IMG/VR virus record: IMGVR_UViG_3300037054_000148
Location: 248,001-312,000 of that record
Length of the DNA stretch: 64,000 nt
Reading direction: 5' to 3' (one strand)
The notes under the pieces were generated by a model that was given only the letters and a program-made list of their open reading frames with translations, did no database searches and was not told the DNA's origin. Position 1 is the stretch's first letter. Every line of letters begins with the position of its first letter. Below are positions 321 through 2,353 of this stretch, piece by piece. A program made the translations under genes and the position numbers.

Positions 321-718
321 GTGAAGAGAGTGAGTTCCAGAAAGAACTAGCCAGCTTTTATGAAGAGCTTCAGGCCAGACAAAAGCAGATGGACCCGGTA
401 GCCGCCAAGGCGTTATACGAAAATCTAGCTTATCTGTATAGCTATTCGGATGAACGGCAGGGTGGGAGGACTAGTTTACAGATGTGTATGGCCCCAGCGT
501 GTGCGGTATACATCTGGTGCAACTTCCACCTCTACTACCCTAGGAAGTTGGCTGAGCATTTGAACCGAAAGGACTTACAAATCGTAGACCCCCATTGGCT
601 TGAGGGAATGGATTGGCGGGGTCGGTGGTTCAGTGGGGTGGTTGTGGACCATGCGGCCCATCTGACTGAGCCGCAGGGGATGTGGTTTGAGGCGGTGTTG
701 GCCCGAATAGAAAAATAA
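317..718 (+). CDS. hypothetical protein
   Basis: 133-aa ORF, coupled to the upstream ORF. Confidence 0.6.
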   Translation: MSEESEFQKELASFYEELQARQKQMDPVAAKALYENLAYLYSYSDERQGGRTSLQMCMAPACAVYIWCNFHLYYPRKLAEHLNRKDLQIVDPHWLEGMDWRGRWFSGVVVDHAAHLTEPQGMWFEAVLARIEK

Positions 719-726
719 AAAGTTTT

Positions 727-756
727 GTACCCAATTACCAATTTTCGCGGTATCAT
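727..756 (+). promoter_or_regulatory. putative sigma70-type early promoter
   Basis: TACCCA-18 nt-TATCAT; same layout (GG before the -10) as the sites at 7510, 8444, 11564 and 12202. Confidence 0.5.
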
Positions 757-775
757 ATCCTATCGGAGGTGTACC

Positions 776-2353
776 ATTTCTCATTTTACTGTACTCGTGA
801 TCGGTAATGATCCGGAAACTCAACTCGCCCCCTATCAGGAAAACAACATGGGGGATTGTCCGAAGGAATATCTGGCCTTCAACGACTCGGAAGAAGAGAT
901 GCTGAAGCAGTATCAGACTGAGACCTCCGAGCGAGTTGTCATGCCGGATGGTCGGCTCCTCAGTCTCTACGACGACTGCTTCAAGGTGCCAGATACGAGG
1001 CCCGGTTCCTTCAGTTTCTCCACCACCTTCGAGGTGCCGGAAGACCTGGAGCAGAAGGAGATGCCATTCACCGAGATTTACCCCACCTTCGAAGATTTTG
1101 CCACGGACTGGCATGGTTCCAGTGAGCGGGATCCAGAGATGAACCGGTATGGCTACTGGGAAAACCTGGACCGAAACAAAGTAACTGTATGTTTAGGACT
1201 TTCCAATCCCATGAATGAAGGGATTGGTTATGCCAAAAGGTCATCCAGTGAATCGTCAGAATACCCCGGTGGGGATGAAACTGTGCCCCAGGTGTGGAGT
1301 GACAAAGAAATTAGAGAATTTCTCGCTGGCGAAGAAAAGCGCGGACGGAAGATTCACCTACTGTCGCCAGTGTATGACGGAGAAGAATTTGGAGAGGACT
1401 CCGGAACTCCGACAAAAATGGCATCACTTTGCGAAGTACAAGATAACTCCGGAACAGTATCAGAGACTGCTAGAGGCTCAAAGTGGGAAGTGTGCGATAT
1501 GCAAGAGAGGGGAAGGGGGGAAGGAACTCTGCAAGAACGGGAAGTGGAGATACCTTGCGGTGGACCACTCTCACCAGACAGGGCAAGTTCGGGGGCTTTT
1601 ATGCTCAAATTGCAACACGCTTTTGGGGCTGGTGGAGGGGAACTTCGAATTGCTTCTTGTAATGAAGTCTTACCTCATGGACCCCACATCTTCAAGAATG
1701 AAGTGATTGGTGGGGCCAAGTGGGACTGGTTCCAGATGGGTGGTCGGTGGACTGGCTTCTTCAAGCTGAAGGAAGCGGTCGCTCATATCGGTGGGGTGCT
1801 GGGCACTCCTGGCCTGATGACTCCTGAAGCTGAAGCTGGACATGCGGATCAACTGATAGCCGGGGATGTGGATTTCGAAGGAATGCGAACCCAGGCTGCG
1901 GTCAAGGCGTTCCAGCAGTATGAGGATGTGGCCCATGCGTTCGGCGGAGAGATCCCCAAGATCGAACGCCTCTGGAAAGAAGTGGTCGAGGACCAGACCA
2001 TCGGTGATATCCAAGCCCGAAGGGACTTCTACCATGCTCAGCCTGCCCTGGTAAGGCTGAGCATGGTAGAAGTCCAGGATGCCAAGGCCATGCCGGAGTC
2101 GGTGGATCGTTTCTTCTTCGATCTGGAAGAGTTCCAGTGCGACGAAGAAGCTTACGTCGAACGGGCCAAGAACTCTGCCTGTGTGCCCTTCGCCTTCGTG
2201 AAAGAGGGGCAGTGGTATGAGAGGGGCCGGATGGGCTGGTGGGCCTGTGTGAGCAACGAGAAGGACCGTGACGAGTGGAACCGTCAGTTCAACAAGATGA
2301 TGGACGAACTTCCGGCCAACACGCTCCTGACCCTGGTTGATTGCCACATCTGA
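776..2353 (+). CDS. conserved phage protein (SHFTVLVIG...YGYWEN/AKWDW..GGRW...VDCHI type) carrying a ~181-codon in-frame insertion
   Basis: Open frame 725-2353; GGAGG at 765-769 precedes ATT at 776; GC-rich codon style outside ~1166-1714 and AT-richer inside. Confidence 0.75.
   Translation: MSHFTVLVIGNDPETQLAPYQENNMGDCPKEYLAFNDSEEEMLKQYQTETSERVVMPDGRLLSLYDDCFKVPDTRPGSFSFSTTFEVPEDLEQKEMPFTEIYPTFEDFATDWHGSSERDPEMNRYGYWENLDRNKVTVCLGLSNPMNEGIGYAKRSSSESSEYPGGDETVPQVWSDKEIREFLAGEEKRGRKIHLLSPVYDGEEFGEDSGTPTKMASLCEVQDNSGTVSETARGSKWEVCDMQERGRGEGTLQEREVEIPCGGPLSPDRASSGAFMLKLQHAFGAGGGELRIASCNEVLPHGPHIFKNEVIGGAKWDWFQMGGRWTGFFKLKEAVAHIGGVLGTPGLMTPEAEAGHADQLIAGDVDFEGMRTQAAVKAFQQYEDVAHAFGGEIPKIERLWKEVVEDQTIGDIQARRDFYHAQPALVRLSMVEVQDAKAMPESVDRFFFDLEEFQCDEEAYVERAKNSACVPFAFVKEGQWYERGRMGWWACVSNEKDRDEWNRQFNKMMDELPANTLLTLVDCHI
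1203..1227 (+). promoter_or_regulatory. hairpin occluding the ribosome-binding site of the endonuclease gene
   Basis: CCAATCCC-ATGAATGAA-GGGATTGG perfect 8-bp stem covering GAAGGGA, 6 nt upstream of ATG 1230. Confidence 0.6.
1230..1706 (+). CDS. recombination endonuclease VII-like (HNH-fold) homing endonuclease, +1 frame relative to the host gene
   Basis: CPRC...CRQC zinc finger; YKITPEQY..LLEAQSGKCAIC; LAVDHSHQTGQVRGLLCSNCN..LG are EndoVII hallmarks. Confidence 0.9.
   Translation: MPKGHPVNRQNTPVGMKLCPRCGVTKKLENFSLAKKSADGRFTYCRQCMTEKNLERTPELRQKWHHFAKYKITPEQYQRLLEAQSGKCAICKRGEGGKELCKNGKWRYLAVDHSHQTGQVRGLLCSNCNTLLGLVEGNFELLLVMKSYLMDPTSSRMK

What the first reader, a model, noticed from the sequence alone, without database searches (positions are those of the whole stretch)
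1166..1714. Dual-coding homing endonuclease cassette: EndoVII gene inserted in a host gene whose frame stays open
Seen: a 543-nt, AT-richer insert splits the motif YGYWEN-x-x-AKWDW. It encodes an EndoVII nuclease in the +1 frame (1230-1706), yet the host frame has no stop over about 181 codons. By hand count, about 48 nuclease codons start with AA/AG/GA and about 29 of 163 end in T, so roughly 8 host-frame stops are expected and none occurs. Only about 58 nt upstream and 8 nt downstream of the nuclease ORF remain, too little for a separate group I or II ribozyme core. The host-frame peptide lacks intein block A/B/G motifs. A perfect hairpin (1203-1227) hides the nuclease RBS, as is known for T4 I-TevI and Aeh1 mobE. 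Inference: a selfish element that avoids killing its host gene by overprinting rather than by RNA or protein splicing, leaving a junk loop in the host protein. Alternatives are a cryptic intron (5' after U1167, 3' at G1710) or reinitiation at ATG ~1735, as in split Aeh1 nrdA.
Basis: partly seen in the sequence, partly recalled or inferred. Interest (0 to 1): 0.85.

Follow-up and report, generated by a model that had tools for sequence, protein, structure and literature searches.

The report
Out-of-frame homing nuclease inside open gene
A selfish DNA-cutting enzyme gene sits inside a conserved phage gene in a shifted reading frame, and the phage gene's own frame has been kept free of stop codons across it, so the element seems to survive without RNA or protein splicing; one similar case was described in 2025.

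Summary
Window 1167-1714 is a net +543-nt insert in the turn of the motif YGYWEN-PN-AKWDW of a widespread phage gene of unknown function (phrog_10079). It encodes an intact Endonuclease VII-family nuclease (1230-1706) in the +1 frame, while the host frame stays open.

A frame-agnostic DNA search found six diverged lineages of this cassette (nuclease 39-81% identical). All sit at the same site, in the same register, with insert lengths divisible by 3 and no host-frame stops. Codons ending in T never precede AA/AG/GA codons (0/241 against 133/624 elsewhere). Fourteen free-standing relatives have 1-19 stops in that frame.

No intron or intein signature was found. In the last 13 insert codons, variation follows the host frame's codon phase, which indicates the host frame is translated there. 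Structure prediction puts the site in a beta-hairpin turn and models the insert as a beta stalk plus a disordered loop. Insert-bearing genes are scattered across the host-gene tree, each next to insert-free sisters, as expected for a mobile element.

It is not unprecedented: the 'ShiLan domain' (PMC11855218) is the same kind of element, so this is a new member with stronger comparative evidence.

The parts
765..1165 (+). Host gene, N-terminal part (phrog_10079 family). GGAGG lies at 765-769 and the start suggested by homologues is ATT 776. The part ends with the codons for YGYWEN.
   Evidence: PHROG hit; homologue alignments; start region compared with L004/L005, which have ATG there.
1167..1714 (+). 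The mobile insert. It replaces CCAAT of the insert-free allele (net +543 nt), has lower GC, and has no stop in the host frame.
1167..1229 (+). 5' leader of the insert. In the host frame it reads as the conserved pattern x-x-K/R-x-x-I/V-x-x-C-x-G, predicted to be a beta strand.
   Evidence: host-frame identity 0.47 against 0.33 in the nuclease frame; strand 133-139 in the model.
1203..1227 (+). Perfect 8-bp hairpin with a 9-nt loop. Its 3' arm contains the Shine-Dalgarno-like GAAGGGA (1218-1224) in front of ATG 1230.
   Evidence: Minimum-energy fold; chance 3.5% per insert; not conserved in relatives.
1230..1706 (+). Endonuclease VII-family nuclease gene (158 aa), in frame +1 relative to the host. 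The zinc and catalytic motifs are intact: CxxC at 1491-1502, DHxH at 1563-1574 and CxxCN at 1602-1616.
   Evidence: Pfam PF02945 E=4e-20; phrog_2633; T4 EndoVII 1e7d and Hpy99I by sequence; motif conservation in six lineages.
1676..1714 (+). 3' tail of the insert (last 13 host codons, ending in Gly-Gly at 1709-1714). Its variation follows the host frame's codon phase.
   Evidence: Host position 3 differs at 0.72 against 0.44 and 0.37 (Wilcoxon p=0.009), the same phase as in the flanking exons. Gly-Gly codons vary synonymously among lineages. Strand 304-311 in the model.
1715..2353 (+). Host gene, C-terminal part. It starts with AKWDW and ends with the conserved DCHI and a stop.
   Evidence: PHROG hit E=3e-54; alignments.

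Best explanation
This is a mobile homing-endonuclease cassette that lives inside a conserved phage gene without any splicing.

An Endonuclease VII-type (beta-beta-alpha-metal, HNH-superfamily) nuclease gene has inserted into the DNA encoding the turn of a beta hairpin (YGYWEN-PN-AKWDW) in a phage protein of unknown function. The nuclease is read in frame +1 from its own internal start (ATG 1230). Its ribosome-binding site is partly buried in a hairpin that ribosomes translating the host frame would open.

The host gene is read straight through the nuclease gene in the nuclease's -1 frame. That frame has been purged of stop codons: no T-ending nuclease codon stands before a codon starting with AA, AG or GA. 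The host protein is therefore made in one piece with 155-183 extra residues. The first and last ~10 residues extend the host hairpin as a two-stranded stalk closed by Gly-Gly, and the middle is a hydrophilic, mostly disordered loop.

The nuclease presumably cuts insert-free alleles at the conserved motif, and repair then copies the cassette in (homing).

Shown: the anatomy, the stop purging, its recurrence in diverged lineages, the patchy distribution, and the lack of intron or intein signatures. Inferred: translation through the insert, a functional host protein, nuclease activity and target, and the role of the hairpin.
For: 1. Insert and nuclease identity.

2. Stop purging in the window. 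Zero stops are observed against 6.6-8.3 expected (P about 5e-5), while the third frame has 10.

3. Recurrence. A frame-agnostic DNA pattern (nuclease catalytic motif plus the host's AARTGGG, with a 98-104 nt gap) was run on metagenome and viral contigs. It returned six lineages: window/L024/L030, L001/L022, L002, L003, L006/L012 and L016. All have exactly the same 135-nt spacing, the same +1 register and open host frames. Nuclease-frame third positions differ at 50-63% between the main lineages, so the frames have been kept open through near-saturating change.

4. Pooled codon test. T-ending codons before AA/AG/GA number 0/241 against 133/624 elsewhere (Fisher 3e-21).

5. Control. Fourteen free-standing EndoVII genes caught by the same pattern have 1-19 stops in that frame, most of them 10 or more.

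6. Further members. Seven more insert-bearing products (six full-length or nearly so, one fragment) appear among 1.84 billion representative proteins.

7. Phase switch. The nuclease core varies most at nuclease position 3 (p=0.001), while the last 13 insert codons vary most at host position 3 (p=0.009), like the exons. Host-frame identity exceeds nuclease-frame identity at both ends.

8. Structure. The insert-free protein is modelled at pLDDT 96 with the site in the turn between strands 126-129 and 137-142. In the full-length model the host parts stay above 90, the insert ends form strands, and the middle falls below 50.

9. Mobility. Ten insert-bearing genes need at least 6 gains or losses on the host tree (at least 4 forced by strongly supported branches). 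Each has close insert-free sisters.

10. Precedent for the same architecture: PMC11855218.
Against: - There are no RNA, protein or cleavage data, so splicing by an unrecognised mechanism is not excluded.
- The site lies in the most conserved motif of the protein, where a 181-residue insertion might be expected to hurt. Introns and inteins typically occupy such sites.
- The structure model's picture of the insert rests on few sequences and on low to moderate confidence.
- The window's host gene has ATT where relatives have ATG, so its expression level here is uncertain.
- In L016 the host gene's N-terminal region is in another frame, so that copy may be broken or misassembled.
- The phase-switch test rests on 13 codons and 4-6 related sequences.
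- The DNA pattern sampled only cassettes with an intact nuclease motif, so decayed cassettes were not examined.
Confidence: 0.7

Rival explanations
1. It is a cryptic self-splicing intron (a group I-like or unknown ribozyme) whose core overlaps the nuclease ORF. The insert would be removed from the mRNA, and the open host frame would be incidental or a back-up for unspliced RNA.
For: The insert lies in the most conserved motif, as is typical for intron homing sites. The insert ends in G-rich sequence (GGNGG) in all lineages, and a U follows the 5' junction in the window. Group I introns often carry HNH-type nucleases (general knowledge; PMC3943268).
Against: No Rfam intron model matches the window or five relatives even at E up to 1-10. 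Only 63 and 8 nt lie outside the ORF in the window, and in L001 the nuclease frame runs past the junction. Insert length is divisible by 3 and stop-free in all six lineages, which an intron does not need. The 3' tail varies in the host-frame codon phase. The Gly-Gly codons vary at third positions.
Confidence: 0.08
2. The insert is removed or cut at the protein level, either by an atypical intein-like splicing reaction or by proteolysis (for example at the conserved Gly-Gly junction). The mature host protein would then lack the loop or consist of two associated pieces.
For: The host frame is translated, as shown by the stop purging and the phase switch. A Cys in the 5' leader and a Gly-Gly (once Gly-Cys) before the junction are conserved in all six lineages.
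Against: No intein or Hint family is found in Pfam or NCBIfam for five host-frame inserts. The residue after the junction is Ala in four of six lineages, not Cys, Ser or Thr. There is no His-Asn at the insert's end. The conserved Cys is 9-10 residues inside the insert. The middle of the insert is predicted to be disordered, not a Hint fold. The host-frame core is poorly conserved, at 20-36% between the main lineages.
Confidence: 0.07
3. The host-frame peptide has itself become a functional domain, so it is an exapted overprinted gene rather than a tolerated passenger.
For: The ends are conserved in the host frame. The model contains a helix at residues 176-188 with pLDDT 64-73. The lineage is long-lived.
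Against: Most family members work without it. In the core, the nuclease frame is the better conserved one and variation follows the nuclease's codon phase. No family matches the peptide. 132 residues score below pLDDT 50.
Confidence: 0.08
4. The open frame is a by-product of composition or chance, the host gene is dead or dispensable in these phages, or the gene works as two pieces with reinitiation downstream.
For: The window's host gene starts with ATT instead of ATG. L016 has a frame break upstream. A deletion variant that removes the N-terminal half exists in two contigs.
Against: Six lineages have zero stops, with shuffle probabilities of 5e-5 to 0.016 each, and the third frame carries 8-11 stops. 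Free-standing relatives of similar GC have 10-19 stops. The flanking host exons show purifying selection, with position 3 the most variable. There is no stop to reinitiate after, and Met 1735 is not conserved.
Confidence: 0.04

Closest known systems
ShiLan domain and related 'hidden' out-of-frame HNH insertion elements in actinobacteriophage DNA methylases (Arsenault, Gosselin & Gogarten 2025, PMC11855218; earlier PMC9957025)
   Same: An insertion in a conserved phage gene, absent from close relatives and patchily distributed. There are no stop codons in the host frame. An HNH-superfamily nuclease ORF in another frame fills almost the whole insert. No intron or intein signature is found. The host-frame peptide is predicted to form a hairpin or loop held away from the host fold. 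The evidence is computational only.
   Different: The nuclease belongs to the Endonuclease VII family (PF02945) rather than being an I-HmuI-like HNH with flanking zinc fingers. The host gene has unknown function (phrog_10079) instead of being a methylase, and the source is an environmental, probably jumbo phage rather than a mycobacteriophage. A Shine-Dalgarno-like site inside a hairpin precedes the start, whereas that paper proposes leaderless GTG initiation. This work adds stop-avoidance statistics, free-standing controls, six diverged lineages and a codon-phase switch. Sequence homology to the ShiLan nuclease was not tested.
F-CphI of cyanophage S-PM2, a homing endonuclease that uses the Endo VII catalytic motif (PMC6083498, abstract seen)
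   Same: It is an Endonuclease VII-type catalytic module used by a phage homing endonuclease.
   Different: By its F- prefix (own knowledge of the nomenclature; the abstract does not say so) F-CphI is a free-standing gene, not embedded in an open host reading frame. No direct sequence comparison was made here.
mobE inside nrdA of Aeromonas phage Aeh1, a 'genes in pieces' arrangement (own knowledge: Friedrich et al. 2007; Gibb & Edgell 2007)
   Same: An HNH-type homing nuclease gene sits inside a conserved phage gene without an intron or intein. Nuclease translation is restrained by RNA structure over its ribosome-binding site.
   Different: In Aeh1 the host gene is split into two separately translated polypeptides. 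Here the host frame is continuous and stop-free, and no conserved restart codon exists.
Group I intron-encoded HNH nucleases (I-HmuI, I-TevIII) and HNH-containing inteins
   Same: A homing nuclease is parked in a highly conserved site of a conserved gene, with presence or absence varying among close relatives.
   Different: No ribozyme core was found. No Hint domain was found, and the nuclease is out of frame with the host.

Membership tests
Out-of-frame HNH insertion element (ShiLan type) | The insertion lies in a conserved protein-coding gene and is absent from close homologues | tested here: met
   P0002/L004 (85% aa identity) lacks it. Most of 545 and 5832 homologues lack it. Boundaries are fixed.
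Out-of-frame HNH insertion element (ShiLan type) | The host frame has no stop across the insert, and the insert length is divisible by 3 | tested here: met
   True for the window and all six DNA-level lineages. P about 5e-5 for the window.
Out-of-frame HNH insertion element (ShiLan type) | An HNH-superfamily nuclease ORF in an alternate frame occupies nearly the whole insert | tested here: met
   The ORF 1230-1706 lies within 1167-1714 and matches PF02945 at E=4e-20. The register is the same in all relatives.
Out-of-frame HNH insertion element (ShiLan type) | No detectable self-splicing intron or intein features | tested here: met
   Rfam; Pfam and NCBIfam.
Out-of-frame HNH insertion element (ShiLan type) | A disjoint phylogenetic distribution that indicates mobility | tested here: met
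   At least 6 changes on the host tree (at least 4 forced), with insert-free sisters next to each insert-bearing gene.
Out-of-frame HNH insertion element (ShiLan type) | Sequence relatedness to the ShiLan nuclease | not tested
   No ShiLan sequence was fetched. The paper describes an I-HmuI-like HNH with zinc fingers, which suggests a different branch of the superfamily.
Endonuclease VII family (Pfam PF02945) | A profile match above the curated cut-off | tested here: met
   71.9 bits against a cut-off of 23.6.
Endonuclease VII family (Pfam PF02945) | Zinc-binding CxxC...CxxC and catalytic D-H-x-H...N residues are present | tested here: met
   CAIC, VDHSH and CSNCN align with T4 EndoVII and are invariant in six lineages.
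Homing endonuclease (functional class) | Cleaves the insert-free allele at or near the insertion site and drives gene conversion | not testable with these tools
   Only indirect evidence is available: same site in diverged host genes, a patchy distribution, and a nuclease sometimes more similar than its host gene.
Group I intron | A conserved catalytic core (P3-P9) detectable by a covariance model | tested here: not met
   No Intron_gpI hit at E up to 10 in window 900-2000 or at E up to 1 in L001, L002, L003, L006 and L016.
Group I intron | Enough non-coding RNA to build the core outside or beside the ORF | tested here: not met
   63 and 8 nt in the window. The nuclease frame runs past the 3' junction in L001.
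Intein | A Hint domain (splicing blocks A, B, F and G) in the host frame | tested here: not met
   No Pfam or NCBIfam hit for host-frame inserts. The model is mostly disordered.
Intein | Cys, Ser or Thr as the first residue after the insert, and a nuclease domain in frame with the host | tested here: not met
   Ala follows the junction in the window, L002, L003 and L016. The nuclease is in frame +1.
Genes-in-pieces split by a free-standing nuclease gene (Aeh1 nrdA/mobE type) | The host ORF is terminated within the insert, and the downstream piece has its own start | tested here: not met
   No host-frame stop. The in-frame Met at 1735 is not conserved.

The most novel reading that the evidence does not exclude
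This is not a one-off tolerated insertion. It is a long-lived, horizontally spreading lineage of splicing-independent 'read-through' homing elements. Its termini have co-evolved with the host frame into a portable adaptor (a two-stranded beta stalk closed by Gly-Gly) that lets a nuclease gene sit in a beta-hairpin turn of a conserved protein. Together with the ShiLan elements, it would define a third general way, beside introns and inteins, for homing nucleases to live inside genes.
Probability: 0.4. Interest if true: 0.75.

Novelty: new member of a known kind. Interest (0 to 1): 0.6.

Why it matters
Homing endonucleases inside genes are thought to need an intron or an intein to avoid destroying their host gene. 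This locus suggests a third route: stay in the gene, shift frame, and keep the host frame readable. The ShiLan case of 2025 pointed the same way.

Here the evidence is comparative and quantitative. Six lineages that have diverged almost to saturation at silent sites all keep the overlapping frame free of stops. The insert's ends also evolve in the host's codon phase. Finding this in a different nuclease family, host gene and environment makes the phenomenon general rather than a mycobacteriophage curiosity.

It also has practical consequences. Gene callers hide such nucleases inside a longer ORF; none of the relatives' nuclease genes had been called. The T-before-AA/AG/GA depletion gives a simple statistic for finding more of them. 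The system is directly testable with RT-PCR, a western blot and a cleavage assay.

Tried and rejected
1. Rfam scans at permissive thresholds, on the window and on five relatives, found no intron or other RNA family.

2. Pfam, PHROG and NCBIfam searches of host-frame insert peptides found nothing.

3. Reinitiation at ATG 1735 is rejected. There is no upstream stop, the Met is not conserved, and the GGNGG before the junction is followed only by out-of-frame ATG or GTG codons.

4. The hairpin over the ribosome-binding site is not a general feature. It is present in the window and perhaps in L016, but not in L001, L002, L003 or L006.

5. DNA for the more divergent insert-bearing proteins P0237 and P0130 could not be retrieved. 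The viral-contig scans gave nothing or only insert-free relatives. Their nuclease frames are therefore inferred only from host-frame 'shadows' in alignment A5.

6. Three motif-only scans of viral contigs looked for any insert of 420-511 nt between the two host motifs. They returned only false positives, mainly insert-free genes where AARTGGG recurs at the MGWW motif. The genome-collection scan gave one hit with a 98-nt gap instead of 101; it was not examined further and was taken as a chance match.

7. Function of the host protein was not resolved. There is no Pfam or NCBIfam family and no PDB structural neighbour (best E=1.7). The viral structure library returned only uncharacterised phage proteins.

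8. Phage context is uninformative. Eight of ten large window ORFs have no PHROG match.

9. A covariation test for RNA structure across the cassettes was not run, because the alignment is dominated by coding constraints.
Full report
**What is in the sequence**

The window has one open reading frame from 725 to 2353. Its N-terminal 130 and C-terminal 212 residues match the two halves of PHROG family phrog_10079, a 344-position profile of unknown function. The 183 residues between them match nothing.

A second ORF lies in the +1 frame relative to the host, at 1215/1230-1706. It matches Pfam Endonuclease_7 (PF02945, E=4e-20, 71.9 bits against a cut-off of 23.6), PHROG 'endonuclease VII' families, and the solved T4 endonuclease VII by sequence. 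Its CxxC, D-H-x-H and CxxCN motifs are intact.

Alignment with the closest insert-free allele (L004, encoding P0002, 85% aa identity) shows that window 1167-1714 replaces CCAAT, part of the Pro-Asn codons of YGYWEN-PN-AKWDW. The net gain is 543 nt. The insert is lower in GC (0.489 against 0.557).

**Is the open host frame more than chance?**

The host frame is the nuclease's -1 frame. A host-frame stop therefore arises only when a nuclease codon ending in T precedes one starting with AA, AG or GA.

| Measure in the window | Value |
|---|---|
| Nuclease codons ending in T | 28 of 158 |
| Nuclease codons starting with AA/AG/GA | 47 |
| T-ending codons directly before AA/AG/GA codons | 0 |
| Expected host-frame stops, synonymous-codon shuffle | 6.6 (P of zero = 5e-5) |
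| Expected host-frame stops, codon-order shuffle | 8.3 |
| Stops in the third frame | 10 |

**Relatives**

A protein search found hundreds of homologues of 310-350 aa without the insert. It also found three distant ones (31-38% identity; P0033, P0068, P0074) with an insert at exactly the same site. Their DNA (L001-L003) encodes an EndoVII nuclease in the same +1 register. Gene callers had annotated only the long ORF.

Those three were found as uninterrupted proteins, which biases the sample towards open frames. I therefore searched at the DNA level with a pattern that ignores frame state. It combines the nuclease's catalytic motif, a gap of 98-104 nt and the host's AARTGGG, and it was run over the metagenome, viral and genome collections.

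All true cassettes share four properties:
- the gap is exactly 101 nt (135 nt from the T-G codons to the Lys codon);
- the register is the same;
- insert lengths are divisible by 3;
- host frames are open.

They fall into six lineages: window/L024/L030, L001/L022, L002, L003, L006/L012 and L016. Their nucleases are 39-81% identical, and nuclease-frame third positions differ at 50-63% between the main lineages.

| Group | Stops in the host (-1) frame |
|---|---|
| Six cassette nucleases | 0 each (shuffle means 3.1-7.9) |
| Fourteen free-standing EndoVII genes caught by the same pattern | 1-19, most of them 10 or more |

Pooled over the six lineages, T-ending codons before AA/AG/GA codons number 0 of 241, against 133 of 624 elsewhere (Fisher 3e-21).

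A profile search of 1.84 billion representative proteins added seven more insert-bearing products: P0121 (which is L006), P0130, P0132, P0237, P0143, P0221 and the fragment P0135. I could not obtain DNA for the new ones.

**Is the insert spliced out?**

RNA level:
- No Rfam family, and in particular no group I or II intron model, matches the window region at E up to 10 or five relatives at E up to 1.
- Outside the nuclease ORF there are 63 nt upstream and 8 nt downstream in the window.
- In L001 the nuclease frame runs past the 3' junction.

Protein level:
- Host-frame insert peptides match no intein or Hint family in Pfam or NCBIfam.
- The residue after the junction is Ala in four of six lineages.
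- The nuclease is out of frame with the host.

Reinitiation in the style of Aeh1 nrdA is not supported. There is no stop to reinitiate after, and the Met at 1735 is Leu, Ile or Val in most homologues.

**Evidence that the host frame is actually read**

Within the nuclease core, variation between lineages peaks at the nuclease's third codon position. That position is host position 1, which differs at 0.59 against 0.40 and 0.39 for the other two (p=0.001).

In the last 13 codons of the insert, downstream of the nuclease's conserved Tyr-Leu, the peak moves to host position 3 (0.72 against 0.44 and 0.37, p=0.009). This is the same phase as in the flanking host exons.

In that tail and in the 5' leader, host-frame identity (0.47) exceeds nuclease-frame identity (0.30 and 0.33). 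In the catalytic region it is the reverse (0.35 against 0.65).

The two codons before the junction are Gly-Gly in five lineages and Gly-Cys in one, with free third positions.

The sample is small. Even so, the pattern is what translation of the host frame predicts and what an intron does not.

**Structure**

The insert-free protein is modelled with high confidence (pLDDT 96.2). The insertion site is the turn between strands 126-129 and 137-142.

In the full-length window protein:
- the host parts keep pLDDT above 90 and the same secondary structure;
- the first and last ~10 insert residues form strands (133-139 and 304-311, pLDDT about 60-80) that continue the host hairpin;
- residues 145-172 and 196-299 fall below 50.

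The host-frame peptide is hydrophilic (GRAVY -0.4 to -0.8) and rich in Gly, Glu and Ser. This is model-based and should be read as plausibility, not proof.

**Mobility**

On a tree of 128 host proteins with inserts masked, the ten insert-bearing genes need at least six gains or losses, at least four of them forced by strongly supported branches. Each sits next to insert-free sisters. The window's sister is P0002 at branch lengths of about 0.09.

Some nuclease pairs are more alike than their host genes. Window and L016 are 57% identical in the nuclease, while their hosts align over only about 54 residues. L003 and L006 are 81% identical in the nuclease against 60% in the host. This fits spread by homing into a conserved target.

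**Expression of the nuclease**

In the window, a perfect 8-bp hairpin (1203-1227) includes the GAAGGGA that precedes ATG 1230, and it is part of the minimum-energy fold. Such a hairpin occurs somewhere in 3.5% of shuffled inserts and is not conserved in most relatives. Its regulatory role is therefore a reasonable but unproven idea. By analogy with I-TevI and mobE (my own knowledge), masking would limit nuclease translation. Ribosomes reading the host frame would unmask the site.

The nuclease frame is closed just upstream of its start in every lineage except L016. In the window the stops are TAA 1182, TAG 1194 and TGA 1212.

**Comparison with what is known**

A full-text search found one direct precedent, the 'ShiLan domain' of mycobacteriophage DNA methylases (PMC11855218, with PMC9957025). 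That work describes an insertion with no stops in the host frame, an HNH nuclease hidden in another frame and filling the insert, no intron or intein signature, a predicted loop structure, and a patchy distribution. It is computational only.

The present element is the same kind of thing, with a different nuclease family (EndoVII), host gene and environment. This work adds stop-avoidance statistics, free-standing controls, recurrence over deep divergence and the codon-phase switch.

I file it as a new member of that recently described kind. It is not a member of the group I intron, intein or genes-in-pieces classes, whose defining features were tested and not met.

**Verdict**

My confidence in the no-splicing, read-through mechanism is about 0.7. 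The remaining doubt is experimental.

Noticed in passing
window 776-778 (compare L004 2819, L005 109): The host gene's start codon is ATT in the window, six bases after a perfect GGAGG. The insert-free relatives have ATG after AAGGAG. The only in-frame canonical start upstream (TTG 725) has no ribosome-binding site. The insert-bearing allele may be translated weakly.
   Followed up: partly
L007 and L023 against window 371-503 and 1285-2887: Two short metagenome contigs from sibling samples are 99% identical to the window but lack window 504-1284. The ends are joined at a 12-13 nt microhomology (GCCCCAG-C/G-GTGTG). The deletion removes the end of the upstream gene, the host gene's N-terminal half and the nuclease's 5' end. 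P0001 is the resulting fused ORF. This is either a deletion variant in the population or an assembly artefact.
   Followed up: partly
L016 1667-3003 (minus strand): The most divergent cassette-bearing locus has a host gene of another subfamily (STYNP ... KWDYW). Its N-terminal region (MSHF...) lies in a different frame from the rest, overlapping it by about 70 codons. This could be a frameshift, a pseudogene or an assembly error.
   Followed up: no
window 776-2353; model m5065b187c707: The host protein family is very large (5832 representatives at E up to 0.001). It is modelled at pLDDT 96 yet has no structural neighbour in the PDB (best E=1.7) and no Pfam or NCBIfam family. Its viral-library neighbours are uncharacterised proteins of, for example, Pseudomonas phage MP1412 and Rhodococcus phage Finch. 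It may be an undescribed fold and function.
   Followed up: partly
window 23680-59067: A run of very large ORFs on the plus strand (1278, 2266, 1715, 841, 1288, 2191 and 922 aa). The two of them that were tested (841 and 922 aa) have no PHROG match. The window is identical to IMG/VR contigs of 96 kb and 313 kb, so this is probably a jumbo phage of a poorly known group.
   Followed up: no
window 1733-2122 (minus strand) and ORF 1670..2347 (minus strand): The host C-terminal half gives a weak tblastn match (27% over 131 residues, E=5e-5) to the translation of its own reverse strand. That strand also carries a 225-aa antisense ORF. This is probably compositional, but it is unexplained.
   Followed up: no
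L001 3392-3889: In this relative the nuclease frame has no stop before the 3' junction and runs 52 nt into the host's downstream coding sequence. The nuclease's C-terminus there overlaps the host exon itself.
   Followed up: no
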